Shown piece by piece: positions 7,806 through 53,390 of a stretch of 64,000 bases of DNA. The notes under the pieces are model-generated. The model made no database searches, was not told where the DNA came from, and was given only the letters and a program-made list of their open reading frames with translations. The position numbers were made by a program, and so were the translations under genes. Numbering within the stretch: position 1 is the first letter of the stretch; the number at the start of each line of letters is the position of its first letter. The DNA is taken from the NCBI RefSeq assembly GCF_006345805.1, contig NC_043016.1, positions 23,994,001-24,058,000 of the forward strand. Reading direction: 5' to 3'. This stretch comes from Octopus sinensis. Taxonomy: Eukaryota.

Positions 7806-7968
7806 TCACCATCGCCACCACCGCCATCATCATCATTATTGCTACAACAACCACCACCACCGCCGTCGCCGTTATCATCATCATTCACCGTCTCACTCAG
7901 TCTCTCACTCACTCTTTCACTCACATACACACTCTCACTCTCTTTCATTACCTCTACTCTCATTCCAT
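7806..7968 (+). promoter_or_regulatory. Dense sense-strand YCAY cluster immediately upstream of the Nova start codon
   Basis: About 24 TCAT/CCAT/TCAC/CCAC tetramers in about 165 nt (hand count). YCAY is the established Nova/Pasilla binding motif. Confidence 0.55.
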
Positions 7969-8040
7969 TTTATAAGTGAACTATTCAATTAGTCTCGTGC
8001 TCGTGCCGTGGTACTCCGCGAGATCTGGGCTTAGCGAAAG

Positions 8041-8158
8041 ATGGCGATGAGTTTCGATGGCATGAATGGGTCAGATATGGACACATCCGACTCCCGAAAA
8101 AGACCCTCAGACGCCGAAAGTGATAGCGGGGTGACGAAGCGCTCAAACCAAGGCGGAG
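8041..8158 (+). CDS. Nova: Nova coding exon 1 ([39 protein letters not shown]), includes putative NLS RKRP
   Basis: ATG in AAGATGG context with an in-frame upstream TAG at 8032-8034. DSRKRP...TKR matches the Nova N-terminus. Phase-1 donor GAG|GTTAGA at 8159 fits the phase-1 acceptor at 41366. Too short for the ORF track. Confidence 0.88.
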
Positions 8159-8334
8159 GTTAGATACATTTTGAATATCCTTTTGTATTTTTTTTTTTTT
8201 TTTACCATTTTATTTTCTCCATTTCTATGTCTTTGCCTTTTTCTTTTTTTTTTTTTTGCATCCTTCCGAAACGGCAATTTCTACTTCACTCATAATATCT
8301 CTCTCTCTCTTTCGGTCTCTCTCTACCTTCTACG

Positions 8335-8370
<36 letters not shown>

Positions 8371-9136
8371 AATATATATATATATGTATATATATATATG
8401 TGTGTGTATATATGTATGTATGTATGTATTTATGTGTGTGTGCCTCTTCAATTAGCATTATTCCTTCGTTTCAACTTGGTTTTTTTTTTAAATCTATGGG
8501 TTTTCTTTTATACGTTAGACTGGAAAACGCTATCGCTTGTCTTGTATCCCCCCTTTCATTCCGTTTCTTGCCTTTCTTTCTCTTCACCCCTCTCTCCATA
8601 GAACGTTCTCTATCAATCTATCCTCATTATAACACATTTTGGTATTCAAAGTAAATCGTTATTGCTTACAATAATGACCACTTGTCCAAAGAAGTGGAAA
8701 CGAAGGAGAAAGAAGCAAGCTTCACTTCAACCGACATGCAAGAAATGGCAATGAAATCTTCCTCCTTATACTACTGTCTGAATTAGAATTAGTAAAAAAA
8801 AAAAAAAAGAGAGAGAAAAGTAGGGGGGGAGAACGTATTAGATAATGTAGTCCTAGTTACATCAGTACATAAATGATATATATACATACACACACACACA
8901 TAATGTTACACATGTATATTCTATATGAAATACGTACATTTTAAATATACTGAAAACTGCATTTATTGAGATTAAAATATTGAGGAGTATATATACACAC
9001 ACACATTCTAAGCTCTTCACTGTCGCTATTCAGAGTTTCTTGCTTAAACGTCCTTTCAGATGACGACTAATATTAACTCTTTTTTTTTCCTATACGAATT
9101 TTATGCTTTATTCCCTTCTGTATCTCTATGTGTTCT

Positions 9137-9183
<47 letters not shown>

Positions 9184-10074
9184 GTGTATTGGTGTGTACT
9201 CCCTCTATATAATATGTTTGAGACGGGATGGTCATGGTCGGTAGATCTTTTGAAACACATTGAAAAGTCTTGATAGAGGAGGAGGAGGGGGTGTTAATTA
9301 TGTGAGTCGGTGAGGGACTAGGCAACACCAACCACTTGTCCAAATAATTTGCGTTGTCATACAATACACACACGCATATATGTATGTATGTGTGTGTCTA
9401 TACATGTATAGATAGATAGATATGTATATATTATATACATATAAGATATATGTGTATATATATCAAGTAAAAGTCGGCATCGGTTGAGAGGAAACCAACG
9501 ATTGTTGGCAATATGGCCGACGCCACCATCAGCTCCGACGACGTCGTTTACTGCTTTCACCAATGTTGTTGGCTGCTTAAACACTGCTGCTATATAAAAC
9601 CTACTGCGTATAAGGCAGTATAAGATAGCAGCAAGGAGAATTTTAGTGTTTTTATTACTAATCATCTCCTTTCCTTTTTTTTTTTGTTTTATATATATAT
9701 ATATATATATATATTACATTATTTTTGATTTTGGTATATTTCCTACCTACCCTCTCTCTCTCTCTCTCACATGAATAATTACTCTTGACTTTGCAGAAAA
9801 AACACTCATTTTAACAATTTTATTTTTCTTACCCCCTTTTATTCACACCACCTTCCCCATTCTTTTTCACCATTGATATTGGAAATATCCCACTGGGTGT
9901 TTTTTTTCTCTATCGTTTTAGATTAGTTTCGTTCAGTGTTAATGAAAAATTAAGCTAACATAAAGTGACGCTATTAACACATTGACGTGTATATTATGTG
10001 AATATGCGTGTGTACATACATATATATATATATAATATATATATATAATATATATATATATATATACATATATG

Positions 10075-10108
<34 letters not shown>

Positions 10109-10222
10109 ACACTACTAGCACATAAATGTAGATATACGATGTATATATTAATCACATCTATATGACAGTATTTAATACACAGTATGTGTGTATGTAATTC
10201 TGTGTGTACTTACGTATGTATA

Positions 10223-10263
<41 letters not shown>

Positions 10264-10484: not shown

Positions 10485-10536
<52 letters not shown>

Positions 10537-12203
10537 ATTTGTACAGTAAATGTTAAAGAATATTGGAATATCGAGAAAAAAAAAAAGCGAAAAGAATATA
10601 TCTAAATGTCCTGTTATAAGTAATTTTTGTAAATTTTCATTATGAAAGAAGTGTGGTTGTCCTTCTTGGTGTTCCGTACGGGACAGATAGAGATTAGTTT
10701 GTCATTCAAAAGTGTGTGTGTGTCATAGGATGGTTGTTGGACCTTTTTGATAATTCTGACACAAGTAAAGCAATTCGTATTCTTGGCTGGATTATTTAAA
10801 ACCATTTGTTCTATATTTAAGATTTTTTTTCCTTCTTTAATATCAATTAAATTTATATTTTCTGTGTGTATGTGTGAAATAAATCCTTCAGATATGTCGG
10901 TGAACTAGATGACTATGTTGTATGATCCTGTATTGACTTTTATATAACTACAGTCAATAGTTAGAAACCTCTCCATCTTTGCATTTTTATATCGGCTTGT
11001 GTGCCCCTCCCACCTTTACTCCAATCCCTTCCGAGATGTAATTGTTCATAGATCCACTCCACCCCCTAATTATTAAAGTTCTAAGCTATTAGTGCGTTCT
11101 GCCAATAAACCGAATACGTGCGCGCGCGCGTACGTGCACGTTCTCAATTCATTTTGAATAGTTCCTATAAATTAATTTCAGCTGTGAATTATAACGATCA
11201 AAAGAATAAAGGATATATATATATAATGCTTAATTTTTTTTAATGTAGAAGGATTTTCAAATACAAAATATGCTCAGGAAAACGAAGGTTTAAGATTTAC
11301 TAAAGTCGACATTTTATCGAATTATAAATGTACGATGAACATGTATCGTTTTAGAGCCGATATTTTATGGCAATCTTTAGAAGATGGTATTTCAGCGACA
11401 TGCAAGAGAAGAAAAGAAGAAAAAAAAACCCTCATTCGGATATCTCGTTCTGAATATTACGTATGACAGGCAGAACTATATATAGCAATGAATTCGGAGT
11501 ACGCGATTCAGACAGCCTGAAGGTGGGAGCCGACATCACTTCGCATTGCGCAAAAAAAAAAAAAAAAAAATGACTCGACTCGACCTACATACTTCCGTCT
11601 ATAATATTGAAGACAACAACCTTTTCGATAGATGTGAGCTAGCAAGTTTTCCTGCATGGAGAGGTATTATCTTGCCTTCTTCGGAGTTAGGAAATTTGAG
11701 GTTTATAATTTTATTACATATAACACTTAGTGATTTTAACGGGTTTCTCTTGATTATCCATCCTGTTTAGTGCTCGTTGGATTGGATGGATAGCTAAACA
11801 GATAGCTAGGTAGATAAATGATCGCAAATGTATGTAGGACTTGTGTGGCCACGTCGTAACAAGAGCAACACCCACTGACACAGCTAACGTGATGTCTAGC
11901 TATCACTTGTAGACATTTCTTTTGCTAATGCGGACACGTGTCAATTAATATCAAGTATTCTTTTTAATAATTTTGTATTATATTTGGATGTTGAGACAGT
12001 TTGCTCTCTACATTCTTTAAGTCGAACTATATATATATATATATTTAACCGATCGGTATTGTATTGCTGCTTCGTCTGTTGATCATGTCAGAACAAGTAT
12101 AACGATGGCTACGTATGGCACATCTGATATATCTACACCCGAACTACCAGGTATCTGATATCTACCTCTCTACATCGCCCCTCCTTATTTGTCTCATTAT
12201 ATA

Positions 12204-15500: not shown

Positions 15501-18500
15501 AAAAATATTGCATTTTATAATCACAATATATTAACCAGCTTTTTAGATTGTTTGGTCTCAATTATTTTAGTAAACATATTTTCAACATATGCTTATAGTC
15601 GGTTCTGGGTTCAGTCTCACTTCATGACTCCCTGGGCAAGTGTCTTCTACTATAGTTTCAGGCCAATCAAAGCGTTGTGAGTGGATTTGGTGGATGGAAA
15701 TCCTGTGTTTTTGTGTATGTTCTCCACCTCCACTTGAGAACTGGTGTTCAACAAAAAAGACTGGTAGAATAAGCATCAGGCTTAAAAAAGAAAAAGAGGA
15801 CTGGGGTTGATTCATTCAACTAAAATTCTTCAATGCAGTGCCCCAGCATAGCTGCAGTTCTAATGACTGAAACAAATGAAAGAATAATATAAAGAAATAC
15901 ATGACTGATCAGTTGTTGTTGAAATAACAATCGGTCTCATACTTAGGATGAAACCTTTTTCTTTTCAATTTTCACATATATGTTCTTCAGTTTCATATCT
16001 GTTGACCATTAGGTGTCTTATTTGTACCGGGCCAAATTAAGAGTAGGAATCTTCATTTCTAAATTATGGAAGTAATGTCGTTATCTACCATATTGCTGAC
16101 ATATGTTCCCATTGATTGAGAAATAAGGATTCTTGTTTGAATCCAAGAATAAGTGGTTGGTGATAAAGAGATATGTACTGTGTATAAATCTTAGAGTGTA
16201 AGTGATTTAAAAAGAAAACTGGGTATATGACGCATTAGATGTTGAGAGGACTATGCTGGTTTGGCCATGTGATGAGAACGGATGGGGATAGCTGCATAAA
16301 GAAGTGTCAATCTAATTGTGGAAGGAGTAGATGTGGGATGAAGTGAGAAAGTATCTTCTGTATAGAGGAAGAGCAAAACTGGAAATCTGGGAACATTGAT
16401 GATAGATTTAGGATCTTTGTTGTTCTAAACAAACTTCAAGGAAATTAAAAAAAAGACCTTGATAAAATTTTTGTGGAATAGTATGAAATTAACTGTCAAG
16501 GTTTTGCTGTGTTCACTTAAATTTTGATTTAACAGGTGGTATTTATATTGTTACACATCATCATCATCGTTGTTTAATGTCTGCTTTCCATGCTGGCATG
16601 GGTTGGACAGTTTGACTGAAGGCTGCACCAGGCTCCAATCTAATCTGGCAAAGTTTCTACTGTTGGATGCCCTTCCTAATGACATGAAATTGTCTGAAAT
16701 ATCCTCATCTCAGTTTTTTTCTTATTTGCTATCAACACTTGTTTAAAGTTTAACTACAATGTCATTGTATGTACATGTGTATGTACACACACACACACAT
16801 TATGGTTAACCTTTCTGCCAATTTTGGCATCGTTTTAATAGAATAAACTATGAAAATAAATCTAGATATATGTAATGTATAAATTCAACTTAAACTAGAA
16901 ACCTTATTTGTAAATCAGTAGTAACATATGTCAGTGGCTGGCAAATAAACGCAATATTCCCTTAGTTCAGAAATTGTTTGCTCATAGGAAGTGCTTGATA
17001 AATGATAGAATATTCAGGCTAAGATGTAACATAGGCTATTTTATTCCATTGCACATTGTCTTTGACTTACACAATTTGACAAATTGAATTCAGTGTTAAA
17101 AGAAGTTACAAATTACCATGTCTTTGTAGTTTATATAAAAATGCCAGTGATATAATTTTTTGTTGAAATTTTTACTTATTAATATTAAAGCTTGGTTTCA
17201 AAGGATAAGGGCATTACAAACTATTTTGCATTAAATTTCATCTTCTGTAAAAAAAAAAATCCTACATTTTGCTCAATTTATATTAATTTCTCAATTAGTT
17301 GGAAATTGAGGTTTTTCGTAAAGATATTTTGTGAACTTGAAATAAATATTGTTACCCTTTTGTAGCTCTTTACTTGTTTATTTCTAGGTACTATTGGGAC
17401 ACCTGATGACTACAGCTGTGAATATAAATCTGATTCAGGTAGGTTGACTAATCTTTACACACACACACACACACACACAAGTGAATAAAAGTTATACATA
17501 TATGTGTGTTTGTAAATATATTTGTATACATGTTTATGTATATGAATGTATTATGTTCATGTGTAATCTGTGTGTATATGTATGTGTGCATATTTGTTAT
17601 GTGTATGTGTGTATATGTGTGAATATGTATATATGTTTGTGTATGTGTGTGTGTACATTTATATACATGTGTGTGTGTACATTTATATACATGTTAAATG
17701 TGATTGTATGTATATATATACACACACATACTCACAAATAGACATGAACTACGTATATTTGATAATTAGTTCTGACTTAACATGAAATTATCAATATTCT
17801 GTCTTGTATCCTGTTAACTTAGCATTGTCAAAAAGTTGCATTTGTGAATATGCATTTTTTCCGCTCCCCCATTTTGTACAATTTCAACTATCATTCATTG
17901 CTAGTTTACATTAACATTGCAATCATCTGTTCATTTGCTTTTCATTAATTAACTAAAATTTCATATTTCATTGATATTGCCAGAATTGAATTTCCGAATT
18001 TTTATTATGAAGAAACAAAAAATATCCAAAGCAAGAATTTTAATTTCATTCCTCCCAGTTGAAGATGGGATTCATTCTTTTCTTTTTTTTTTTTATCAAA
18101 TTCATTTTAACAGATTGACTGTGGAAATATTCCTAGAATCTGAAATTTCATCACATTTCATGAAAATGTTTGCTAAATCTAAAAATATAACTGCTTTTCT
18201 TAGAATTACATAAGGATTATTGTAGAGCTTTAGTTAGAACAAAATCCAGAGAAGTTATTTTCACAAGTTTAAGGATGAATATGAATTTTAAATATGGTTA
18301 TTTCTAATTCTTACTTTACTAGTTATGCCAGATTGATCAAATGCATGCAATTATTCCTATACTAAAACATTTCACTTAAAAAAAATTTTTTTTTACCAAG
18401 TTTGTTTGCTCTTCTTGCATTTTCCATCAAAATTCACAACTGATTTATAGAATTTCTACCAGTTAAGCATTATTAATATTGGGCTTGTTTTTGTAAAAAT

Positions 18501-43341: not shown

Positions 43342-45968
43342 TTATATATATATATATATACACACATACATATATTAGCTGGTTTTTACATGATGATCAG
43401 GTCACTGCTGCCTCCTCTTTCCAACTGCATTCAGCATGTCCAAATTAATTTAGCATTTACCTGTTTCATTTTTAAGGCTAAGACAGTTCTGCATTTTATA
43501 ATAAATAACTGTTAACCACATTTGTTTGATTTGGTCCTTGATTTAGTAATGAATTATAGTTAGTTTGTTTTTTATACAGTTTGAACATTAGTCAACTAAA
43601 GATATGAAATTGTCTTATAGTATGTTATACTAATGAAATATTTATTCAAATCTCTCCAAAAATTTGCTGATAATTTTTAATTTCACAAAAAAAAAAACCT
43701 GTGGTTAACTAAATAAAAATAAGAATTTTATTAAAAAAGTTTTTCTTAAATATTTTAAAATGTAACAGACAATAGATCATTTTTAACAAGATTAACAATT
43801 TAAATTTGGTTTGATACATATAAAGTCATTCATTTTGATCATAAAAAAATCATAATTAATTTGTAACTGAATCAAAATTAAAGCTATTTATGTATTTATT
43901 ATCTAATGCTCCATGTTTGTTTTTAATTATTAATTGTTGTTTTACCAATGTTTTCAGGTGAAAATCTTAGTCCCTAATAGTACTGCAGGAATGATAATTG
44001 GTAAAGGTGGCATTTATATAAAACAAATTAAGGAGGAAAGTGGAGCGTATGTGCAGATATCTCAAAAGTCAAAAGAAACAAATTTGCCAGAACGCTGTGT
44101 AACAGTTGCAGGTGAGTGCAGCCTTGTTTTAGTGTGTTTATTGTATTTTGAATTATTGTTTGAAACTGAATTTGTGACTAGGAAACAAGTTCTCTTGTGT
44201 AGTATTATTTTTAATTTTGTGCATGTATTATGAAATTGTTTGACATTTTGAAAGCTGTGTTTTGCTGTAGTGTTTTGAATTAAAACATTGTGAACTTGAT
44301 GATTTGTTGTCTTGGGCAGATTTTTACTAGTGACCATCCATCTATAATAAAGTTGGACTCTTTTCTTTTTATAAATTACATTGCATTTGTTATTTAGTTG
44401 CCATAAGCCTATTTATTATATTTATATTGCAAATGACTTTGGTATATTTATCACTAAAATTTATAAACCATTCTATATTTAAATACTTAATAGGGTGTTG
44501 GGGGGTAAATTATGAATTTCTAAGAAATTTGTTTATCTGTTCCGGACTCTGCATTTGTTGCTACTGAATATTTCTTGTCATCTTGACTTAGAAAAACAGC
44601 TCCTAAATATTTTTATTAAATGTTTAGTATGTAGCCCTATATTATCTATTTTAGTAACTTGGCTGAAATGTTAATACATTCATTGTTTAGAAAATTATTG
44701 TAAATAAGGTAGTTTTTGTTTAATACTTTTTCTTAAATTTTAGTTAGTCTAAACTGTTTTTTTTTTCCATTTTTTTTTTCCTTCTCAATCTTTGTTTTGT
44801 AGGTGATGTTGAGTCCAACAGAAGAGCTGTTGACATGATATTACAGAAGATTGTTGAAGATCCTCAAAGTGGAAGCTGTCCAAATATCAGTTATGCAGAT
44901 TACACAGGACCAGTGGCCAGTGCTAATCCTACCGGGTCCCCTTTCGCTAACACGGACTATATACAAAACAGAAGTACAGAGATAGGATTAGCTAATAATA
45001 ACTTTGGTGCTTTTGGTTTTGGTTTTAATGGAAATGCCTTTGGAAACAATATAGGAGCTAGCATGACGAATCTGAACTTGAATGCAGCTTTAAGTGGTGG
45101 CACTAGTAATAGCATTAACAGTACAGCTTTGGATAACATAAAAATAACTCTGCGAGGAAATGGATTTTCAGATCAAGCAACCGAAGAAATAAGTACTGCC
45201 ATGAACACTTTAGCTAGCTATGGTATATTAGCTAGTATGGGTTTAGGAATGGGCAGTTTGAATAATTTGGCAAACTTAGGAACTGGAAGCGGTCTAGGAA
45301 CAGGACTGAATCTTAATTCATCTGGCTTGCAAGGCTCTAGCATGATGTCAAGTAGTACAACTTCAACCACAAGTGTGAGCAGCCCTTTCTTTAACACTAC
45401 CACCAGTACTAACAGTGCTGGTAGCCTTTTTGGTCCAGTTGGCAGTGGGTCATCCGGATTAGGAAGTTCAGGCTCCACTGGAGCCAACTCTAGTCTTTTC
45501 AGTAATTCCTCTCCTAGTATTGGCAACGAAAGATATGGGGGAAGTCCAATGCTTAATGATTCATTTGGCAATGCTGCTAATTATCCCAGCAATCCTGGGT
45601 TCACTGGAACTCCAAGCATAGCTGGCGACAGGTCTCCTAATGTTAATCAAAATTCTTTTGGCCTCGGAACTGGCATCTATAGCCCTGCTGATGACAAATC
45701 AGCCCCGGCAACTAAGCAAGAGATGGAGGTTCCGGAGACAATTGTTGGAGCTATCCTGGGACCTGGCGGGAAAGGCATCGTGGAAATACAACAGTTCACG
45801 GGCACCAACATTCAGATTTCAAAAAAAGGAGTCTATGTACCTGGTACCCGTAATCGTGTTGTCACCATAACTGGTACTCCTAACAACATTTCCAAAGCCC
45901 AGTTATTTATCCAGCGGCGCCTCCAGCAAGAGGAAATGAAGAGGGCTCGTCAAGCTTCTACCCGTTAG
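8041..45968 (+). CDS. Nova: Nova/pasilla-family triple-KH RNA-binding protein, spliced CDS join(8041..8158,41367..41507,42081..42226,43958..44111,44803..45968), 574 aa
   Basis: Exon lengths 118+141+146+154+1166 = 1725 nt give 575 codons with no internal stop. All introns are GT-AG, with phases 1,1,0,1. The translation has the Nova N-terminal SRKRP motif, KH1 ([18 protein letters not shown]), KH2 ([18 protein letters not shown]), the Nova-typical [28 protein letters not shown] and NTLASYG motifs, and KH3 ([34 protein letters not shown]). Confidence 0.95.
15601..15885 (+). mobile_element. tRNA-derived SINE, internally deleted
   Basis: ggttctgggttcagtc..ctgggcaagtgtcttctactatag..gtgagtggatttgg..ctggggttgatt..aatgactgaaacaa, homologous to 25143-25526. 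Confidence 0.85.
16195..16350 (+). mobile_element. Short degenerate RTE RT C-terminal fragment
   Basis: gctggtttggccatgtgatgagaa..gatagctgcataaagaagtgtcaa resembles 1050-1170 and the reverse complement of 2330-2420. Confidence 0.6.
16556..16683 (-). mobile_element. RTE/SINE 3' tail, reverse orientation
   Basis: Reverse complement of 40-190 (catcatcatc..tttccatgctggcatgggttggac..ggatgcccttcctaa). Confidence 0.8.
17388..17438 (+). CDS. Candidate 51-nt symmetric (phase 1-1) cassette exon in Nova intron 1 ([17 protein letters not shown])
   Basis: Pyrimidine-rich acceptor ctctttacttgtttatttctag, donor CAG|GTAGGT. Length is divisible by 3, there is no stop in the Nova frame, and GC is higher than the flanks. 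Confidence 0.5.
20505..20511 (+). other. Candidate 7-nt microexon (GAATATG)
   Basis: Sequence is ccctgtccttgttatag|GAATATG|gtaagta: near-consensus donor and a reasonable acceptor, flanked by YCAY motifs. Confidence 0.3.
23900..23953. repeat. 27-bp perfect tandem duplication (tcaatgctatagatattccagtaccat x2)
   Basis: Directly visible. Confidence 0.9.
24561..24925 (+). mobile_element. Degraded tRNA-derived SINE with RTE-like tail
   Basis: gtgtggttaaaaagtttgct..gttcagtcc..ggcaagtgt..tttgtgagtg..ggcaacaggaaaagcatccagc..aacccac. Confidence 0.7.
25143..25526 (+). mobile_element. Near full-length tRNA-derived SINE
   Basis: A/B-box-like 5' head (ggagtggctgtgtg..ccgggttcagt), central (AT)/(GT) microsatellite, and a 3' end aatgactgaaacaagtaaaagag. 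Several homologous copies lie in the window. Confidence 0.9.
27350..27505 (+). mobile_element. Second SINE family copy
   Basis: gagttcatatccc..tcaactttgcctttcatccttt..gactc homologous to 58011-58160. Confidence 0.7.
35635..35748 (+). CDS. Candidate 114-nt symmetric cassette exon or alternative first exon ([38 protein letters not shown])
   Basis: Strong donor AAG|GTGAGC at 35749 in phase 1. The Nova-compatible frame is open from 35598 to 35756, and the segment is a local GC/CpG island. Acceptors at 35634 (114 nt) or 35602 (146 nt) are weak to moderate. Confidence 0.42.
38203..38207 (+). other. Candidate 5-nt microexon (GTGGG)
   Basis: Sequence is gtatttttcttgtgtag|GTGGG|gtaagtc: strong acceptor and perfect GTAAGT donor. 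Confidence 0.3.
38537..38800 (+). mobile_element. Degraded tRNA-derived SINE
   Basis: cttgcttctcgaccacatg..gggttcagtcccactgtgtggcac..ggcaagtgt..gagtggattt. Confidence 0.8.
41367..41507 (+). CDS. Nova: Nova coding exon 2, first half of KH1 ([48 protein letters not shown])
   Basis: Acceptor tttttattacag|GG, donor CTG|GTAACT, 141 nt, GxxG loop (GKGG). Confidence 0.95.
42081..42226 (+). CDS. Nova: Nova coding exon 3, second half of KH1 plus linker ([49 protein letters not shown])
   Basis: Acceptor aatttccag|GG, donor CAG|[19 protein letters not shown] matches Nova KH1. Confidence 0.95.
42919..42990 (+). CDS. Candidate 72-nt phase 0-0 cassette exon between KH1 and KH2 ([24 protein letters not shown])
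   Basis: Acceptor tcattcttactttcag, donor CAG|GTCAGA. 24 codons, open in the Nova frame. Confidence 0.45.
43958..44111 (+). CDS. Nova: Nova coding exon 4, most of KH2 ([52 protein letters not shown])
   Basis: Acceptor gttttcag|GTG, donor CAG|GTGAGT. Lies inside ORF-track entry 43934..44233. Confidence 0.95.
44803..45968 (+). CDS. Nova: Nova terminal coding exon: end of KH2, long G/S/N/T-rich linker, KH3, stop TAG
   Basis: Acceptor tttgttttgtag|GT at 44802, in frame with the 377-aa ORF 44835..45968. Confidence 0.96.
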
Positions 45969-46188
45969 GGTACCCTCTCCCGCCATTTCATTGCACGGAA
46001 ATTCCCCCTTTTTCTTTCTTTTTCTTTTTTTTTCTTAAATCCTCTCTCCCTCACTCTCTCACCCATTCCTCTTTTTTTTTCTTAACTTCTCCCACTTTCA
46101 TTTAAACATTTTTATTTATTTTATTTTATATTTTTGAAATCAAATTAAACCCATCCCGAATCCTAACCATAAATATAATTCAAACAAA

Positions 46189-46190
<2 letters not shown>

Positions 46191-46237
<47 letters not shown>

Positions 46238-46449
46238 TATACATATATATATATGCACAGACACACATACACACGTGTGCGCGCATACATATTCATGCAT
46301 ATTCAAATAAGCACGCCATGTACATACATGTGTGTCTGTGTATATACGCATATAGGTGCGAGTATATATGTATGTATATACTACACTCATACACTTTTGT
46401 GTATTTGTGTGAATATGTGTGTGTGTGTGTATATATATATATGTGTATA

Positions 46450-46489
<40 letters not shown>

Positions 46490-46490
46490 A
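46191..46490. repeat. Compound (TA)n/(CA)n/(TG)n microsatellite, representative of dozens in the window (others near 8338-8440, 10018-10110, 10476-10532, 12200-12260, 12520-12600, 17458-17720, 52650-52920, 60985-61040)
   Basis: Directly visible dinucleotide runs. These generate most of the spurious [12 protein letters not shown] ORFs in the track. Confidence 0.95.
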
Positions 46491-49298
46491 AAATCATTTT
46501 CCTCTTTCCACAGCCTTGGAAATAGGAATAGAAAACTTAAATACATTGCCTCTCCAATTTCTAGATATAACAAGATGAAAGCTAACCTTTTTTTCTTTAT
46601 TTTTTCATCAAATTCATTCAGTATATAATTCATTTATAAATTAAATTTCAAATGCTCTAAATGAATCCCATACAGCCTCAGAAGTGTTTAGTATCACATG
46701 CACACATACATCCATATAAAATTACATACACACACACACACTCACATGCATATATCTTCTCAAGGTGGGGAAAATTGAAATGCCTATGTTAATGAGCTTT
46801 TTTAGTGTTACGTTTTGTGTTTATATATATAAATGTATATATGTGTATGAATGTGTTTATGTGTTTAATTGGTATTTTTTACGTCTGTTTTCCATGCTAT
46901 CATGGATTTAGATGTTCTAAATATGGATATTTTCATGAACTGTGTGACTGTGTGTGTGCCTTGTGCATTGTGTGTATATATTTGTATATGTTTGTGTGTG
47001 TATATATATGTGTATATGTATATACATACATACATACATAAATGTGCACACAGATTTTTTTGATTATATCTTTTGAGTTTTTATTTATATTAATTTAATG
47101 CTTTGAAAATATTTGTAAAAAATCAAAAATTGAAAAAATTGAAAAAAATCTATTTAAAATGTTACACTCATCGTATTCATATTCTAGAAATAAGATACAT
47201 TCTAATCTGGATATCTAATCATCAGTATGTTCTAAAATCGTTTAAGAACGTTTTGGTTTTATTTATTTATTTTTTTTTCAAATGGAAATCATAACTTTAA
47301 TGTTCAGGTCAAATTTGTTAGCTAATTGAGGCATTTATTTCTATATTTTTTAAATGTTTCTAGATTTTACATAATTTATTCAATAGCTATCTGATTGCCA
47401 TATTCTCACTACAGAAAATCATCAATTTTTGTCTGATTGTCATAAACATGTTTGTGGCTGAGTTTAATGTATTCTGATAAATCTTACATCTTATAGTGAA
47501 AAGGTTGGCTTAATTTGAATTTCTGGTAGTTGGAAAGACAAAGTGACTATTTCTGTTATTTTCTTTTTGATTCACAGAGGCTTCCCTGAATATTATGAAA
47601 ATGGAATGTGGTATTGAAATATCTGTTGCAGTCTCTTCAAGCAGCTTTAAAAACTGTTTTATTGAACCAAAATAGAATTAACTTTTCAGTGCTTAGGTCA
47701 AAATTTGTCTTTCACTGATACTTCTCATCAAGTATCAAAATATGTAGGTTGGCCTAAGATGAAAAAGAAATCTTGAGCAAGAAAGATGGTTATACCTGAT
47801 TATAACATTATACATTCATTATTGTTTCATTTTGCAAAAAGAAAAATAACAAAAAAAGACAAAAAAAAGAAAAAAAATATGAAGATAAAATGTAAAAAAA
47901 AAAAATCATTCTCTTTTTATTTTCCTAATAACCTATGTTTATTATATCAATGATTTATTAACTCGTATTTCAGAGCACCTATGTAATGAGAAATCAAAAT
48001 CATCTTAATTCTATTAAAGCAATTTTTCACCCTATAGATTCCATAAAATCTCCACATATCTATCTCTAAACTCTATTTATACCTATTTATATCCATGTAT
48101 TTATATTGGTTATATCAACCTTTTTCCTTGCATAAATAACTTCTAATTTCTAAACATCTCATTATTTGATTTATATTTTCCTCATTAAAATGTTTTAGTC
48201 TCTAAATTTCAGTTCAATTGTTATAGAATTTAATATTAAAATATATATTTATATATAGTATGTATATATATATGTATATATATATGCATACGTATATATC
48301 TTGTTGCAATGTTACAGTGATTCAGTGATTATAGTTTTCAATACTGTTGCCCTGTTTTGTAATGTACTAGTTTCTAGTAGCTCCACACATACACACACAC
48401 AAAATAAAACCCATCCTTTAATGTTTGTAATTCATTTGCAGAATTTAAAATATTTACTCCATAAAGTACTTTAAGTTACACATGCTTCTAAATAGCTCTA
48501 ATTTAAATCTTGTCTGATGAGAGAAACTTTACTCTATAATAGTCTTGTACTTATATTAGATATTGAAAATATTTTAAGTATTTCTAAAAAATTTTAAGCA
48601 CATTTTGTGTGTGTGTTAGTCTCTGTCTTTTAGCAAGGTGTCTCATTTCATTAGGGTTTTAGGTGAATCCTTTAGCTTAGGTTACATAGTTAATTTTCTC
48701 TCTATTATTTTGCTATCAATATTTATTCGTGAGTGTAATCTTCACAGCATTTTATTTAACAATTGTATATGAAATGATTAATAGTTAGTCATGTGTCAGT
48801 AGATTTATACTCTTCCTTTTCATGTTGCATACATATTTTTGGAGAATTTAATTAAGGAAACAATGTAACAAAAGGCATTTTAATGCAATTATCTTCAGGT
48901 GTTTTCTTCTGAATCTTAATATTTTAATCTTAAAAGTAGTTATGAATACACTATTTTCACAGCTTTCTAAATATGCAATCAATTTTGAACTTTCCATTTA
49001 TTTGTGCAATTACGTCATCATGATTGTACTATATTAATACTATTTTATCTTCTAAACCATGACAATATTTCATTGAAACTATGAGTATATGATATTTGGT
49101 TTCATTTAATTAGATAGTTTGATGTTACACCCCATTCTATCAGTATATTTTACTAAGGCTAATCACTGAACTATCTAGTTGTTACATTTTTTGCATGTTA
49201 GCACATTTTATTTAATTAGAAATTACATTTTGCAAAGTGAACTCTATGCAAATATTTTGCCTTAATATTGGAAATGGTTAAGATATATAGTCCTAGTC

Positions 49299-49329
<31 letters not shown>

Positions 49330-50189
49330 GATTTGCTAATGCAACAATTTAATGTAAAATTTCATTTTTTGAGGTATGGCTTGAAAATATCTAAAGTGAA
49401 AGAGGAAAGCAAAACATTTACAATACTAAACACTTCAAAGGCAATTATTAATTTTCCATCTATTTATTTTAAATTGCAGTGTCATTGTTTGAATCATAGA
49501 GGCTTTGTGTTATCACCTAAGGGATATGTATATCATTTGTATATACATACACATGCATATTCTACATATACATACATACATTCACACACATACATTTGTA
49601 CCCCTCTTTCATTTTTCCTATCCCTTTAAAATCTGATATATTTTTTAAATTATCATTTCATTATTTGATTATTTTGTTTTAGGGGGCATTTACAGTTCCA
49701 AGAATGGCTGCACCTTTTTCTTCCATTTTTATGGTCAGCAGAGATATCTGGAATTATAAAGAATGATGCCTTCTGCTCATACCAACTTACAATGTGCCAG
49801 ATATTTTTTATTACACAGCAAAGATGATGTACATGTTTGCATTGTATATTTAAATTTTGCAATAATATAGTTATTCATGTGATATAATGAAAATTTTCAT
49901 AAGTCTCTCTGCTAATCAGAATCAAGTAGAAAGGCTTCATAACTAGTCACAATAACTTTACTCTATACTACATAAGCACCAATAAATTGTCAAGATATGA
50001 CTACTATACATCATTTTCACTCTCCCTCTAAAAAAAAAACTAAAACTAAATAGATCTATTTAAAATGCTAACAACATTTTGTCATAGTCTGTTAAAATTT
50101 TCCAATATTTACTTTTATATATGTATATATATATGTATTCATGCACACATATGCACATATATACACACACACACATACACAATGAAGCA

Positions 50190-50233
<44 letters not shown>

Positions 50234-52875
50234 TATCAGGGTGTGTGTGTATATATATGTTTGTGTGTGTGTGTGTGTAGTTTAAAGGTGAGCAATATCT
50301 CCTCATGCTGAAAGCCGTTTGAAGCTGGCATGGTCATAACAGAAAAAGCAATTGTTAAGTTTGCACATTTTGTTGGTCAATAATATATTTTGATATATTG
50401 CTTTTACCATTTGTTTACATGCCTGCTAATAGCAACAGCTATGCTATGAGTGCATAACGCATATTGGAAATTTATTCTTCCATGTTAACACTCATTTGAT
50501 GGTTCCTTCCAATCTTTTTATATTTCTGTGCTCACTGTTCACATTTAGTTTGTATTTGCAAAATTAATCTTCAATTTTAATCTGAAGAAAAAAAATCACA
50601 CAACATAGAAAAATGATTGATTCAGCTTTCACTTTATTTATGTGTGTGTGTATGTTTGTGTGTATATGTGTTTTGTGTATATTATATATACACACATACA
50701 TGCGCACACACATGTACATACCCATGCATACACATGAAGGTAGTATCATTTGATATAGTGATTTAAGGTACAAGTTGAAAAAAAAACTTATTTGCACCTG
50801 ACATATTTATCATTAGAAATTTCATTATATGCTATATAAATGATTATACGAAATTGGAATTGTTTATTTGAATATATAGTGCAAAAATGCTGTGTTTTTG
50901 CTATGTAATTAAAACATGTTGTGCTCAGAAATAAAAGCGGCCATTTTTTTAGGAAAGCTTTGTGAATCATACATCTGTGCATGAGTTCCAAATTGTGGAA
51001 AGACAAGAAAATGGATTTTCTCTTAATGCTGCGGTGTCACCCATGTGTGTTTGTGTGACTAATCAACCAATCACTTCCAGGTGTGTCCACTCTACTTTGC
51101 CCTCTTCTATATTCTCACAAAAGGAAAAAGTGGCATACTTACAGGGCTGTGCATCTTCGTTTTTCACTAATAGTCATACCAGAATTGGTTGCATAATGTA
51201 CATTAAAACACAAGCCATTAGTCCTTGCATTGCTGTATATAATTCACCCACAAACTCTGGCTGTAGCCATCACTCTCATGTGCCCATCTGTGACAATGCA
51301 CGGATCACACTAGGAAATGTAACATGGGCACTCATTAAATTTTTTTTTATAGTCAAGTTAACACACTAAAATATGACATTGCTCAGGCATTTGAGGAAAG
51401 TTAAAAGTTGTGAGGTCAGTGAAATATTATTTGTATTGATGATGATTATCATTCCAAGGTTATATAATTTTTCATTTTTCCTCTTCAGACAGATGGCTTA
51501 TGTAATGTCATAATATATTTTCTAGCTGTTGGATCGACATTGAAGAAGAAACCTTTATATATTATATATTGTTTTTTTTTGGTTTTTTTTCCCCCCTCCC
51601 CGTTAGAAAAATGTCAGCTTGAACATTATCTTCGATATTTGTTCAACTGCTTTACCTTGTATTTCTTATCTGTCACATTCAGTTTGTTACTGTTATTGTA
51701 TAGTATAAATTTTTTAGGGGGTCTTGGGAAAAAAAAATTCTGCAAAATCTGTCCTATCCAAAGGAAGTAATTTTTTTTATTTAGTTTCATTTCCTTTTTC
51801 TTGTACTGCCTTAAAGGCTTAAATTATTTCATGGCAGTCATTTTTTTTTCTTTTATCCCCTCTGCCCCTCCTTTTTTGGTTGATTAGATTAACAAGCTTT
51901 TGTTTGGTAAATTGTGAGAGAAAGCAATGAAATGGAGACTTTTTTTTCTTTTTTTCTTCTCTCTATGACTTATTGAGGCTATTACTTCTGTACCACTTCG
52001 CCATAAAATTTCCATTCATGCAGGAAGAATAATTGTTCATATTGATTATTCTTCCATCCCTTCAATCTGCCACACTATTACAAAACAATCGTAACTATTT
52101 AGCCACTACAATATTGCAATGACATATTTATTTAGGAATTTGTTGTATTCATTTTCTCCTGCAAAAAATAAACTAGCAGCTTTTTAGCCATTCTTTATTT
52201 CCATTCTCCTCCCCGCTTCTAACACTCTTTTACCCAATATTCACTTTTTCTGTTTCAATTCCAGTTACACTCATTTACTGGTTCCAGCAAGAATGTTGTG
52301 GCCATGCTGGTTACTCTTTTATCTTAGATATCAAGTTAATATTTAAATGCTATTAGCATTAGAAAGTATGTCCTCTTCATCTATAATATCTTTAGATAAT
52401 GGCCTTTTAGTTTGTTTTTCTTTTCATTTGATATATTGATATTTTACTGATGCCAAAATGGCAGAATTACTTATCTCCTTTCCCAGTTTCTTCCTAATAT
52501 TTAGATGCGAAGTGCCATCTGTATTTATATGGTTTTTTCTTCACATTTTCTTCTTTACCCCTTTATTTTATTTTCAAGTAGAATGTTTGATTGCCGCAAT
52601 AGTTATCTATGAAAATTAATAAATCCCCACAGTCTTTTATTGTTTATACACATGCATATATATATATATATATTATATATATATATATATATATGTGTGT
52701 GTGGTGGTGTGTGTTTATATATATCTGTATATAATTTACACACACACTTTAGTGTAACAGTAAGCTGCCACAATAGTTGTCTCATTACCGTGAGTGATAG
52801 ATGAACTTGATTACATGTTCTTAATTCAACTGTTTGTGTATATGTGTGAATATATAACATACATGTGTAACATGT

Positions 52876-52923
<48 letters not shown>

Positions 52924-52974
52924 GAAATGTTGCAAAAGGAAAATAGAAACTATATGTGGCAATGTGAGGGGAAA

Positions 52975-53390
52975 GTAAAGAGGAAAATAAATGAAAATGA
53001 ACATTGGAAATCAAAAAAAGTCGAAGCTTTTTTTATGAAAAGTAATGAAAGATATATACAATTGGATGAACTGAGGTAGGAATAAAAGTAATAGGTCATT
53101 ATTGGGAATTGTTGGAGATTTAAAAGTATAACCGTTTCATAAATTACTAATCATTGCTTTGTATACAGGTATTCATTGCTTTGAATGCACGTCCATTCTA
53201 AGTAATGATTAGTAATTTATGAAAGTTATGCTTTTAAATCTCTTTAACAATTCACAATGATTTTTATTACTTTTATTCTTACCTCAGTTCATTTAATTGT
53301 ATATATCTTTTGTTATTTTTCATAAAAAAGGCATGACTCTTTTTTTTTTTATTTCCAGTGTGCATTTTCGCTTATTTTTCTTCTTGCTTA
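52975..53390 (+). repeat. Long imperfect inverted repeat / predicted RNA fold-back (core arms 53026-53159 and 53200-53332, 40-nt loop)
   Basis: Hand alignment of the 5' arm against the reverse complement of the 3' arm shows about 130 nt of near identity, for example GATATATACAATT..ATGAACTGAGGTA.GAATAAAAGTAATA and TTTCATAAATTACTAATCATT. Weaker homology extends outward. Confidence 0.9.

What the first reader, a model, noticed from the sequence alone, without database searches (positions are those of the whole stretch)
7806..53390. Putative multi-layer Nova self-regulation system in a cephalopod-like genome
Seen in sequence: YCAY clusters before the ATG, around a frameshifting microexon and after the stop; several candidate alternative exons between the NLS exon and KH1; an E4-like cassette between KH1 and KH2; and a sense-strand dsRNA fold-back downstream. 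Established knowledge: Nova/Pasilla proteins bind YCAY clusters, vertebrate Nova-1 regulates its own exon 4, splicing factors often self-limit through NMD-coupled exons, and coleoid cephalopods have unusually heavy ADAR editing. Inference: this locus may combine poison and frame-restoring microexons, N-terminal isoform switching, UTR binding and dsRNA/ADAR control into one feedback circuit.
Basis: partly seen in the sequence, partly recalled or inferred. Interest (0 to 1): 0.72.

Follow-up and report, generated by a model that had tools for sequence, protein, structure and literature searches.

The report
Octopus Nova-1 gene; self-regulation circuit unsupported
This is the already-annotated Nova-1 splicing-factor gene of Octopus sinensis, with real and conserved alternative exons, but the sequence gives no specific support for the proposed multi-layer circuit in which Nova controls its own gene.

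Summary
The window is Octopus sinensis chromosome CM016878.1 (0 mismatches). The finding spans the RefSeq gene Nova-1 (isoforms X1-X10). Most described objects exist. There is a YCAY-dense tract 73 nt before the ATG, alternative 5' exons, a 114-nt cassette, a 72-nt cassette between KH1 and KH2, and a ~175-bp hairpin 7 kb past the stop.

The self-regulation reading fails the tests I could run:
- Sense-strand YCAY is not enriched overall (1031 observed, 1060 expected).
- The two verified cassettes have background YCAY in exon and flanks.
- The 5' tract is low-complexity sequence whose composition explains most of its YCAY. The 3'UTR and microexon flanks are not significant against local shuffles.
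- YCAY is conserved between Octopus and Argonauta no better than other tetramers or its own antisense.
- The candidate 7-nt poison microexon lacks an acceptor in Argonauta.
- The hairpin is absent from Argonauta, and one per 64 kb is the published Octopus genomic expectation.

Residual leads:
- GCAUG (Rbfox-type) motifs are 11/11 conserved near the alternative exons.
- The hairpin shows an unexplained 14:1 sense-strand G.U bias.
- A conserved splice removes KH3.

Verdict: a known gene with ordinary features and low interest.

The parts
5315..5363 (+). Alternative first coding exon C (MLNCKFKRKKGKKMNS.., RefSeq X3/X8), donor gtgagt
   Evidence: Peptide mapping and splice sites. No counterpart found in Argonauta.
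7806..7968 (+). YCAY-dense, pyrimidine-rich low-complexity tract ((CAC/CAT)n, (CTCA)n) 73 nt upstream of the exon-A ATG. It lies in the promoter or 5'UTR.
   Evidence: 21 YCAY in two clusters. TRF repeats. 24 observed against 16.8 +/- 2.1 in local shuffles. The Argonauta counterpart is an unalignable 855-nt CT-rich tract with 5.3 YCAY per 100 nt.
8041..8158 (+). Exon A: ATG plus bipartite NLS (SRKRP...KR)
   Evidence: 95% identical to Argonauta, including 66 nt upstream of the ATG.
11570..11663 (+). Alternative first coding exon B (MTRLDLH..., no NLS). This N-terminus is shared across Mollusca.
   Evidence: 84% identical to Argonauta. The MT[LR]LDL...W[RK]G N-termini occur in bivalves and a chiton.
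12105..12150 (+). Alternative first coding exon D ([14 protein letters not shown])
   Evidence: ATG is TTG in Argonauta and the rest is not aligned.
17388..17438 (+). Exon E2 (51 nt, [17 protein letters not shown]), phase 1-1
   Evidence: 93% identical to Argonauta.
20505..20511 (+). Candidate 7-nt frameshifting (poison) microexon, ttgttatag|GAATATG|gtaagt. Unverified.
   Evidence: Inclusion gives ...KSDSGIWY*. Consistent with RefSeq X10 starting at the downstream MMAS. Donor conserved, acceptor AG absent in Argonauta. Comparable motif-only candidates: 4 sense and 1 antisense in 33 kb.
20682..20734 (+). Two conserved GCAUG motifs, +171 and +219 from the microexon donor
35635..35748 (+). 114-nt in-frame cassette (38 aa) between E2 and KH1, skipped in X6-X9
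   Evidence: Exon plus flanks 97.7% identical to Argonauta. YCAY 3/1/6. Conserved GCAUG at +138.
41367..41507 (+). KH1 exon a
42081..42226 (+). KH1 exon b
42919..42990 (+). 72-nt, 24-aa in-frame cassette ([24 protein letters not shown]) in the KH1-KH2 linker ('E4-like')
   Evidence: Included in X1 and skipped in X4. 98% identical to Argonauta with flanks. YCAY 3/1/1. Absent from a more distant octopod, L002. Conserved GCAUG at -370, +307 and +444.
43958..44111 (+). KH2 exon
44803..45968 (+). Last coding exon (Gly/Ser/Asn-rich linker plus KH3), stop at 45966-45968
45375..47577 (+). Alternative intron (donor GTGAGC inside the last exon) that removes KH3
   Evidence: O. vulgaris and Argonauta models end ...TSTTSRLP*. 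Donor conserved in three octopods.
47578..47589 (+). Coding start of the alternative terminal exon (AGG CTT CCC TGA = RLP*)
   Evidence: 99% identical to Argonauta over 102 nt.
45969..51547 (+). Conserved non-coding domain after the stop (putative 3'UTR). It holds eight conserved AATAAA/ATTAAA signals.
   Evidence: 90% alignable with Argonauta, against 5-10% for the long introns. The ORF at 51043-51369 is not maintained as coding.
52993..53369 (+). Near-perfect inverted repeat (fold-back, ~175-bp stem), specific to the Octopus lineage
   Evidence: Present in O. vulgaris at 99%. Absent at the orthologous Argonauta site. No Rfam family.
53543..55067 (+). Second conserved non-coding block, with a conserved AATAAA at 54791 (possible distal end of a ~9-kb 3'UTR)

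Best explanation
The region is the Octopus sinensis Nova-1 gene, a three-KH-domain neuronal splicing factor. It is already annotated in RefSeq with ten protein isoforms.

Its isoform diversity comes from four mechanisms:
(i) Four alternative first coding exons. Only exon A carries the nuclear localisation signal. The A/B choice is ancient in molluscs.
(ii) An in-frame 114-nt cassette before KH1.
(iii) An in-frame 72-nt cassette in the KH1-KH2 linker.
(iv) A conserved splice from inside the last exon to a terminal exon 1.6 kb past the stop, which removes KH3.

A conserved non-coding domain of 5.6 to 9 kb follows the stop and is most simply a long 3'UTR.

Shown: the exon structure, its conservation, and the statistics of the motifs.

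Inferred:
- The cassettes are regulated. They and their flanks are 98% identical between Octopus and Argonauta while the neighbouring long introns barely align.
- The cis-elements under selection are not YCAY clusters. The only motif with a strand-specific conservation signal is GCAUG, so an Rbfox-type factor is a better candidate regulator than Nova itself.

The YCAY-rich tract before the ATG is a composition-driven, length-variable pyrimidine/CA low-complexity tract. The downstream hairpin is a lineage-specific palindromic insertion of a kind that is common in Octopus genomes. If it is transcribed within the long 3'UTR it would be a generic ADAR substrate. There is no sequence evidence for a dedicated, multi-layer Nova feedback circuit.
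For: - Identity: 100% protein match and 0 mismatches over 55,968 nt to the RefSeq locus.
- Exon graph from X1-X10, with canonical GT-AG junctions.
- Conservation: cassettes plus flanks 98%, alternative terminal acceptor 99%. The 3' domain is 90% alignable, against 5-10% for the long introns.
- YCAY globally: 1031 observed against 1060 expected.
- YCAY at the cassettes: 3/1/6 and 3/1/1, against an intronic mean of 3.1, sd 2.3.
- Local shuffles: 5' tract 24 against 16.8; 3'UTR and microexon flanks not significant.
- YCAY conservation 122/217 = 0.56, against 0.51 background and 0.55 antisense.
- GCAUG 11/11 conserved, the top of 564 pentamers (p = 1.5e-4), with antisense 6/18.
- Exon-B N-terminus shared by bivalves, a chiton and Octopus.
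- Hairpin absent in Argonauta.
- Octopus genomes have 4.4e-3 of loci in long near-perfect dsRNA, which predicts about 280 nt per 64 kb (PMC5625713).
Against: - The 5' tract still has more YCAY than local shuffles allow, in both Octopus (24 against 16.8 +/- 2.1) and Argonauta (45 against 37.7 +/- 3.3). (UCAU)n-like repeats are good Nova ligands whatever their origin.
- The first ~30 nt after the stop, containing GCCAUUUCAU, are conserved in three octopods.
- Footprinting used one species pair and 217 motifs, so power is modest.
- Splicing factors commonly autoregulate, so the prior for some self-binding is not low.
- The GCAUG signal was noticed post hoc. After Bonferroni correction for 564 pentamers, p is about 0.09.
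- The hairpin shows 14 G.U against 1 A.C between its arms (p about 0.001). Neutral decay does not predict this, and it hints at constraint on the sense-strand RNA.
- No transcript data were available, so the UTR extent and microexon use are inferred.
Confidence: 0.8

Rival explanations
1. Nova protein binds YCAY clusters in its own 5' region, around a poison microexon, at the E4-like cassette and in the 3'UTR. A 3'UTR dsRNA adds ADAR control. Together these form one multi-layer negative-feedback circuit.
For: - YCAY clusters exist before the ATG, and there is mild density after the stop and around 20505-20511.
- The 7-nt exon would cause a premature stop, and RefSeq X10 fits a disrupted upstream frame.
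- The 7-nt and 5-nt (38203-38207) candidates together restore the frame if the 114-nt cassette is skipped.
- Vertebrate Nova1 autoregulates exon 4 (PMC5343574).
- The hairpin is real and sense-biased.
Against: - No YCAY enrichment at either verified cassette.
- No preferential or strand-specific YCAY conservation.
- The 3'UTR and microexon densities are explained by local composition.
- The microexon acceptor is not conserved, and motif-only candidates occur by chance.
- No annotated isoform has the frame-restoring pair.
- The hairpin is not conserved in Argonauta and is expected at this density genome-wide.
Confidence: 0.06
2. Limited autoregulation only. Nova (or another KH or pyrimidine-binding protein such as PCBP, hnRNP K or PTB) binds the CU/CA-rich 5' tract or the proximal 3'UTR of its mRNA. 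This tunes translation or stability without any involvement in splicing.
For: - Sense-strand pyrimidine/CA-rich tracts occur at the same place in Octopus and Argonauta despite complete sequence turnover. Both have a YCAY excess over local shuffles.
- GCCAUUUCAU just after the stop is conserved in three octopods.
- YCAY conservation in the 3' domain is slightly above background (0.62 against 0.55).
Against: - It is not shown that the 5' tract is transcribed. The TSS is unknown.
- The tract length varies from 189 to 855 nt.
- Most of the YCAY density follows from composition.
- The 3' excess is not significant and is matched by control motifs such as YACY at 0.65.
Confidence: 0.15
3. Cross-regulation by an Rbfox-type factor. 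Conserved (U)GCAUG motifs downstream of the 114-nt cassette, the 72-nt cassette and the candidate microexon act as intronic enhancers. Nova isoform choice (and possibly poison-exon use) would then be set by Rbfox, not by Nova.
For: - GCAUG is conserved 11/11 in aligned non-coding sequence, the best of 564 pentamers (p = 1.5e-4).
- Its antisense is conserved only 6/18.
- Sites lie at +138 (114-nt cassette), +307 and +444 (72-nt cassette), and +171 and +219 (microexon).
- The distant octopod that lacks the cassette also lacks all GCAUG in that intron.
- Rbfox motifs accompany Nova-regulated exons in mouse (PMC8379844).
Against:
- Total GCAUG count is not enriched (45 against 50 expected).
- Only two species were compared.
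- Several of the conserved sites are far from any exon, in the 3' domain.
Confidence: 0.3
4. The hairpin is a functional sense-strand RNA element. It would be a long dsRNA in the distal Nova 3'UTR, or an independent hairpin-RNA gene. It would be kept paired by selection and act as an ADAR or Dicer substrate that affects Nova mRNA localisation, stability or editing.
For: - 14 G.U against 1 A.C mismatches between the arms (p about 0.001).
- The + strand folds 43 kcal/mol better than the - strand.
- It sits between two blocks of a conserved, probably transcribed, domain in Nova's orientation.
- Base-composition skew predicts a G.U:A.C ratio of only about 1.1 (my calculation composition and pair counts). 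C/T and A/G differences between the two Octopus species are balanced.
Against: - It is absent in Argonauta.
- 10 transversion mismatches and 13 gap positions are tolerated.
- Eight conserved proximal poly(A) signals could end transcripts before it.
- It belongs to no known RNA family.
- Such structures are common in Octopus, and most are repeat-derived.
Confidence: 0.2

Closest known systems
Vertebrate Nova1 exon 4 (E4) and its autoregulation (Dredge et al. 2005, EMBO J, cited from memory and via PMC5343574)
   Same: - An in-frame cassette in the KH1-KH2 linker.
- The same size: 72 nt and 24 aa. The vertebrate size is from memory (human isoforms of 507 and 483 aa).
- Alternatively included in annotated isoforms.
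- Strongly conserved flanks.
   Different: - No sequence similarity.
- The insertion point is offset by 3 codons. Vertebrate...NPDR|E4|ANQVKIIV (2ANN). Octopus...ERHRQ|cassette|VKILV.
- The vertebrate exon and its downstream intron hold multiple YCAY motifs. Octopus has 1 in the exon and 1 in the 200 nt downstream.
- It is absent from other molluscs, arthropods, annelids and brachiopods sampled, and from a more distant octopod.
- Independent origin within the same linker is therefore more likely than orthology.
Molluscan Nova/Pasilla genes as annotated in RefSeq (oysters, scallops, clams, abalone, Aplysia, chiton)
   Same: - The three-KH architecture.
- NLS exon A (MAM.YDGMNG..SRKRP..KRSNQGG).
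- The alternative NLS-less first exon B (MT[LR]LDL...).
- Variable exons between the NLS and KH1.
- Alternative splicing at the KH1/KH2 junction.
   Different: - Other molluscs insert only 1-5 residues at the KH1/KH2 junction (Q, VE, VS, VIE, VTVIN, FDSFQ).
- The 24-aa cassette and the KH3-skipping terminal exon were seen only in octopods.
NMD-coupled poison exons in splicing-factor genes (for example PTBP1 exon 11 skipping, SR-protein poison cassettes); established knowledge
   Same: A short exon (7 nt) whose inclusion shifts the frame and creates an early stop upstream of many exon junctions.
   Different: - Classical poison exons and their flanks are highly conserved and carry the factor's own binding sites.
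- Here the acceptor is not conserved in Argonauta, YCAY is at the local expectation, and usage is unverified.
Hyper-edited long dsRNAs formed by inverted or palindromic repeats in metazoan transcripts (Porath et al. 2017, PMC5625713)
   Same: - A long, nearly perfect intramolecular duplex in non-coding sequence of a neural gene locus.
- Lineage-specific.
- Octopus is the extreme case for the abundance of such loci.
   Different: - No repeat-family membership was shown. It is single-copy in about 150 kb of Octopus DNA examined.
- Editing and transcription are not tested.
- It has an unusual 14:1 G.U bias.

Membership tests
Nova/Pasilla family of KH-domain splicing factors | Three KH domains in the order KH1-KH2-long linker-KH3, with the GxxG loops | tested here: met
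   Pfam KH_1 hits and 100% identity to RefSeq Nova-1. KH1-KH2 aligns to human NOVA-1 structure 2ANN with E = 2.7e-55. The KH3 motif [19 protein letters not shown] is present.
Nova/Pasilla family of KH-domain splicing factors | N-terminal bipartite NLS exon | tested here: met
   [20 protein letters not shown] is in exon A. It is shared with 92 of the collected homologues.
Nova/Pasilla family of KH-domain splicing factors | YCAY-specific RNA binding by KH3 | not testable with these tools
   Inferred only from high KH3 similarity. It needs SELEX, EMSA or CLIP.
Vertebrate-type Nova1 E4 autoregulated cassette | In-frame alternative cassette in the KH1-KH2 linker | tested here: met
   42919-42990, 72 nt. 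X1 includes it and X4 skips it.
Vertebrate-type Nova1 E4 autoregulated cassette | YCAY cluster in the exon and/or adjacent downstream intron | tested here: not met
   1 YCAY in the exon, 3 in the upstream 200 nt and 1 in the downstream 200 nt. The background mean is 3.1. The vertebrate feature is described in PMC5343574.
Vertebrate-type Nova1 E4 autoregulated cassette | Orthology: same intron position and recognisable sequence | tested here: not met
   There is a 3-codon offset relative to 2ANN and no similarity. The cassette is absent in other invertebrates sampled and in octopod L002.
Vertebrate-type Nova1 E4 autoregulated cassette | Inclusion responds to Nova protein level | not testable with these tools
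   Needs a minigene or knockdown experiment.
NMD-coupled poison-exon autoregulation | Exon whose inclusion introduces a premature stop | tested here: met
   In silico, the 7-nt exon 20505-20511 gives ...GIWY*.
NMD-coupled poison-exon autoregulation | Exon actually spliced into transcripts | not testable with these tools
   No transcript data could be reached. RefSeq X10 is compatible but not diagnostic.
NMD-coupled poison-exon autoregulation | Conserved splice sites and flanks | tested here: not met
   The donor and 270 nt downstream are conserved, but the acceptor AG is TG in Argonauta and there is no alternative acceptor.
NMD-coupled poison-exon autoregulation | Binding sites of the factor itself around the exon, above chance | tested here: not met
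   7 and 7 YCAY observed, against 4.9 and 7.5 in local shuffles.
ADAR hyper-editing substrate in a transcript | Long, nearly perfect intramolecular duplex | tested here: met
   167 pairs, -195 kcal/mol, z = -24.6.
ADAR hyper-editing substrate in a transcript | Lies within a transcribed region, with A-to-G clusters in RNA | not testable with these tools
   It lies between conserved blocks of a putative long 3'UTR. There are eight conserved proximal poly(A) signals, and no RNA data.
Palindromic transposon / MITE | Multiple dispersed copies; terminal inverted repeats with target-site duplication | tested here: inconclusive
   No second copy in the window, in the Argonauta locus or in 44 kb of other Octopus DNA. 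No clear target-site duplication at the ends. A whole-genome search was not possible.

The most novel reading that the evidence does not exclude
Octopods may have evolved their own regulatory package on Nova-1, distinct from the vertebrate one. Its parts would be:
- An Rbfox-type (GCAUG-dependent) control of a lineage-specific 72-nt KH1-KH2 linker cassette. This cassette converged on the size and place of vertebrate E4.
- The same control acting on a 7-nt poison microexon.
- A conserved splice that deletes the YCAY-binding KH3 domain.
- In Octopus proper, a sense-strand-constrained 175-bp dsRNA inserted in a ~9-kb 3'UTR that couples Nova mRNA to ADAR.

Probability: 0.1. Interest if true: 0.55.

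Novelty: already known. Interest (0 to 1): 0.17.

Why it matters
If the original claim were true, it would be the first case of Nova autoregulation outside vertebrates, in the lineage with the most elaborate invertebrate brain and the heaviest RNA editing. My evidence shows instead that the locus is an annotated gene whose motif 'clusters' mostly reflect base composition. That saves follow-up effort.

Three things remain useful and can each be checked cheaply with public Octopus RNA-seq:
- An exact exon map with conservation scores.
- The observation that an NLS-plus versus NLS-minus first-exon switch in Nova is ancient in molluscs.
- Three leads: GCAUG conservation near the cassettes, the KH3-deleting isoform, and the G.U-biased hairpin.

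Tried and rejected
- Transcript evidence. The look-up of the window's last-exon ORF, P0002 and P0001 found nothing.
- P0131 turned out to be a genomic KH1 exon of another species.
- Papers. Dredge 2005 (PMC1142566) and Irimia 2011 (PMC3069165) are not held. No paper links Nova with cephalopods.
- Paralogue P0073's 25-aa insert as evidence for an old cassette. Rejected: it is fused to the KH2 exon and its alignment score to the cassette is 4.
- Extension of the hairpin into the flanking (TG)n/(CA)n tracts. Rejected: 62% identity, microsatellite only.
- The ORF at 51043-51369, called as a gene in O. vulgaris. Rejected as coding: frameshifting indels and 12/11/12 substitutions by codon position.
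- Mutation-bias test for the G.U asymmetry, using Argonauta as outgroup. Underpowered, with only 5 polarised sites.
- Sub-threshold Rfam hits (mir-297, mir-466 and others). Rejected as microsatellite artefacts on both strands.
- Search for extra hairpin copies in 44 kb of other Octopus DNA. Negative, but low power.
- Squid and cuttlefish orthologues. None was present among the top protein hits, so wider coleoid conservation could not be tested.

Full report
IDENTITY

The window is AT-rich animal DNA (about 30% G+C, many TA/CA microsatellites). Stop-free stretches at 41.3-45.9 kb encode KH domains. A protein search gave 100% identity to RNA-binding protein Nova-1 isoform X4 of Octopus sinensis. 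Its 90% cluster holds RefSeq isoforms X1-X10. The window matches CM016878.1 from position 23,994,001 with 0 mismatches over 55,968 compared bases. RefSeq calls no other gene within 10 kb past the stop.

EXON MAP

I aligned the ten isoforms and mapped each segment to the window.

- There are four alternative first coding exons: C 5315-5363, A 8041-8158 (ATG plus bipartite NLS), B 11570-11663 and D 12105-12150.
- E2 is 17388-17438 (51 nt).
- A 114-nt cassette lies at 35635-35748 and is skipped in X6-X9.
- KH1 is split into 41367-41507 and 42081-42226.
- A 72-nt cassette lies at 42919-42990. It is present in X1 and skipped in X4.
- KH2 is 43958-44111.
- The last exon is 44803-45968.

All junctions are GT-AG. 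The N-terminal junctions are phase 1, and the 72-nt cassette is phase 0. X10 starts at a Met inside the 114-nt cassette, so some transcript lacks an open upstream frame.

The O. vulgaris and Argonauta hians models end '...TSTTSRLP*'. This maps to a donor GTGAGC at 45375 inside the last exon and an acceptor at 47578 (AGG CTT CCC TGA). That splice deletes KH3.

They are also already annotated.

COMPARATIVE LOCI

I fetched four kinds of locus:

- The Argonauta hians locus (L001).
- The O. vulgaris locus (L008). It differs from the window at 0.39% of aligned sites.
- Genomic contigs of a more distant, unidentified octopod (L002-L007).
- The two Octopus paralogue loci.

Against Argonauta, the long introns are only 5-10% alignable. 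The following are conserved:

- Exon A plus 66 nt upstream, at 95%.
- Both cassettes with their flanks, at 98%.
- The whole KH1b-cassette-KH2 interval, at 77-81%.
- The alternative terminal acceptor, at 99%.
- 90% of the 5.6 kb after the stop.
- A further block at 53543-55067, which holds a conserved AATAAA at 54791.

Exon B is partly conserved. Exons C and D are not. The cassettes are therefore constrained, regulated exons. The sequence after the stop behaves like a long 3'UTR of 5.6 to about 9 kb. An ORF there, called as a gene in O. vulgaris, is not maintained as coding in Argonauta.

YCAY TESTS

Test 1, global count. The + strand has 1031 YCAY against 1060 expected from dinucleotide content.

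Test 2, clusters. Clusters of at least 5 motifs with gaps of at most 15 nt number 9 on the + strand and 4 on the - strand. 2-kb block shuffles give 2.05 +/- 1.4. The largest clusters (8 and 13 motifs) lie at 7806-7836 and 7875-7968, 73 nt before the ATG.

Test 3, the 5' tract. It is made of (CACCACCGC), (CTCA)n and related repeats. Local dinucleotide shuffles already give 16.8 +/- 2.1 of its 24 YCAY. The Argonauta counterpart cannot be aligned. It is an 855-nt CT-rich tract with 45 YCAY against 37.7 +/- 3.3 expected.

Test 4, exon flanks. Counts are compared with 758 intronic 200-nt windows (mean 3.1, sd 2.3).

| Feature | YCAY up / exon / down |
|---|---|
| 114-nt cassette | 3 / 1 / 6 |
| 72-nt cassette | 3 / 1 / 1 |
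| Upstream of exon A | 16 |
| First 200 nt of 3'UTR | 8 |

Only the last two stand out. The 3'UTR value is not significant against local shuffles (5.6 +/- 1.5).

Test 5, footprinting. In all aligned non-coding sequence, 122 of 217 YCAY are perfectly conserved (0.56). All tetramers score 0.51 (p = 0.07) and the antisense RTGR scores 0.55. TCAT ranks 42nd of 204 tetramers.

Test 6, the proximal 3'UTR. The first ~30 nt after the stop, including GCCAUUUCAU, are conserved in three octopods. Beyond that, Octopus-Argonauta identity is uniformly 94%, so it says nothing specific about YCAY.

Conclusion: YCAY clusters are absent where the Nova RNA map would need them. Where YCAY is dense, composition explains most or all of the density.

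THE MICROEXON

It sits at the edge of a block conserved with Argonauta. Inclusion gives ...KSDSGIWY* with or without the 114-nt cassette, which fits X10.

The evidence against a conserved function is as follows:

- The donor and 270 nt downstream are conserved, but the acceptor AG is TG in Argonauta and there is no substitute acceptor.
- A motif filter (YAG, at least 11 of 19 pyrimidines, GTRAGT donor, 3-30 nt) finds 4 sense and 1 antisense candidates in 33 kb of introns. None is aligned across both splice sites.
- One candidate (38203-38207, 5 nt) would restore the frame together with the 7-nt exon, but only if the 114-nt cassette is skipped. No RefSeq isoform has this combination.
- Flanking YCAY (7 and 7) equals local expectation.

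Use of these exons remains untested.

GCAUG

While reading the alignment I noticed conserved GCAUG motifs, so this observation is post hoc.

- All 11 GCAUG in aligned non-coding sequence are conserved, against a pentamer background of 0.45.
- It is the best of 564 pentamers (p = 1.5e-4, about 0.09 after Bonferroni).
- The antisense CAUGC is conserved 6/18.
- Sites lie at +138 of the 114-nt cassette, at -370, +307 and +444 of the 72-nt cassette, at +171 and +219 of the microexon, and at four places in the 3' domain.
- The distant octopod that lacks the 72-nt cassette has no GCAUG in that intron.
- The total GCAUG count is not enriched (45 against 50 expected).

This points to an Rbfox-type regulator more than to Nova. 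It is a lead, not a result.

THE E4 COMPARISON

Vertebrate E4 is a 24-aa cassette in the same linker (size from memory). The E4-less human structure 2ANN reads ...NPDR|ANQVKIIVPNSTAG. Its insertion point is therefore 3 codons upstream of the motif that the Octopus cassette abuts.

There is no sequence similarity. Across 223 collected Nova/Pasilla proteins, other molluscs show only 1-5-aa inserts at this junction (Q, VE, VS, VIE, VTVIN, FDSFQ), and arthropods, annelids and brachiopods show none. The distant octopod has no trace of the cassette. Vertebrate E4 and its downstream intron carry multiple YCAY motifs (PMC5343574), and the Octopus cassette does not.

So the cassette resembles E4 in size and place, but membership of the E4 autoregulatory type is not met.

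N-TERMINAL SWITCHING

The exon-B N-terminus (MT[LR]LDL...W[RK]G, without the NLS) occurs in oysters, clams, scallops, Dreissena, a chiton and Octopus. The choice between an NLS-bearing and an NLS-lacking first exon is therefore an old molluscan trait. It is real, but it is not a cephalopod novelty, and nothing ties it to Nova feedback.

THE HAIRPIN

An inverted repeat at 52993-53369 folds into 167 pairs: 118 A-U, 33 G-C and 16 G.U. MFE is -195.4 kcal/mol (z = -24.6) on the + strand and -152.7 on the - strand. Key properties:

- It lies 7 kb past the stop.
- It is present in O. vulgaris at 99% identity.
- It is absent at the orthologous Argonauta site. The anchors enclose 1995 nt in Octopus and 652 nt in Argonauta.
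- It is single-copy in the window and in 44 kb of other Octopus DNA.
- Its flanking complementarity is only microsatellite.
- It has no Rfam match.

Porath et al. report that 4.4e-3 of random 50-bp Octopus loci form long, near-perfect dsRNA (PMC5625713). That predicts about 280 nt per 64 kb, so one such element here is ordinary.

One feature is not ordinary. Arm-to-arm mismatches are 14 G.U against 1 A.C (p about 0.001), alongside 10 transversions and 13 gap positions. Base-composition skew predicts a ratio of only about 1.1. C/T and A/G differences between the two Octopus species are balanced at 64 against 73. The polarised test had only 5 sites. This may reflect constraint on a sense-strand RNA, but the tolerated transversions argue against simple selection. 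I leave it unexplained.

Whether Nova transcripts reach the hairpin is unknown. It sits between conserved blocks, but eight conserved proximal poly(A) signals precede it.

VERDICT

The proposed Nova self-regulation circuit has no specific sequence support. The locus is an annotated gene with ordinary features. The residual leads are GCAUG conservation, the KH3-deleting isoform and the G.U-biased hairpin. All three can be checked cheaply with public RNA-seq.

Noticed in passing
window 45375-47589: A conserved alternative splice runs from a GTGAGC donor inside the last exon to an acceptor 1.6 kb past the stop (AGG CTT CCC TGA = RLP*). It removes KH3, the main YCAY-binding domain. It is annotated in O. 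vulgaris and Argonauta but is not among the O. sinensis X1-X10 proteins. The acceptor region is 99% identical to Argonauta.
   Followed up: partly
window 20682, 20730, 35886, 42549, 43297, 43434, 49193, 50328, 50979, 54315: Every aligned non-coding GCAUG (Rbfox core motif) is conserved between Octopus and Argonauta: 11/11, the top of 564 pentamers. The antisense is conserved only 6/18. Several sites lie 140-450 nt downstream of alternative exons.
   Followed up: partly
window 52993-53369: The hairpin arms differ by 14 transitions that give G.U on the sense strand, but only 1 that gives A.C (p about 0.001). Base-composition skew or balanced C/T against A/G divergence does not explain this.
   Followed up: partly
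window 11570-11663 (exon B): The NLS-less alternative N-terminus MT[LR]LDL...W[RK]G is shared by oysters, clams, scallops, Dreissena, a chiton and Octopus. The NLS-plus versus NLS-minus first-exon switch in Nova therefore predates the split of these molluscan classes.
   Followed up: partly
L011 10001-11671; L010 10001-12706 (O. vulgaris): Octopus has two further Nova paralogues. One (P0040, 61% identical) is a single uninterrupted 1671-nt ORF, as expected of a retrocopy. The other (P0073, 49% identical) has three exons in 2.7 kb and a Ser/Thr-rich 25-aa insert fused to the KH2 exon.
   Followed up: partly
proteins P0003, P0008, P0010, P0022, P0029, P0041, P0205 (KH1/KH2 junction): Other molluscs show alternative 1-5-residue inserts (Q, VE, VS, VIE, VTVIN, FDSFQ) exactly at the KH1/KH2 exon junction. 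This junction is a recurrent site of alternative splicing across Mollusca.
   Followed up: no
window 7786-7974 vs L001 9077-9931: The pyrimidine/CA-rich tract before exon A keeps its strand and composition but not its sequence or length (189 nt in Octopus, 855 nt in Argonauta). It lies between well-conserved blocks.
   Followed up: partly
window 51043-51369: The O. vulgaris annotation calls a 108-aa gene here. In Argonauta the frame is broken by indels and substitutions are spread evenly over codon positions. It is a spurious ORF inside conserved non-coding sequence (82% identity).
   Followed up: yes
window 1010-1225 (+), 2290-2529 (-), 3022-3306 (-): ORFs with reverse-transcriptase/LINE-like motifs (..YADDLAL.., ..RLRWYGHV..GRPRKTW..) lie upstream of the gene. 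These are transposon fragments in a more G+C-rich stretch (42%).
   Followed up: no
window 29066-29093 and 38203-38207: Two further motif-only short exon candidates (28 nt and 5 nt) have good splice signals. The 5-nt one would restore the frame after the 7-nt exon only if the 114-nt cassette is skipped (...SDSGIWWGENVHLK). Neither is aligned with Argonauta.
   Followed up: partly
window 46200-47060, 50110-50720, 52640-52935: Sub-threshold Rfam matches to mir-297, mir-466, mir-3149 and similar families fall on (TA/TG/CA)n microsatellites on both strands. They are artefacts of repeat-derived miRNA models.
   Followed up: yes
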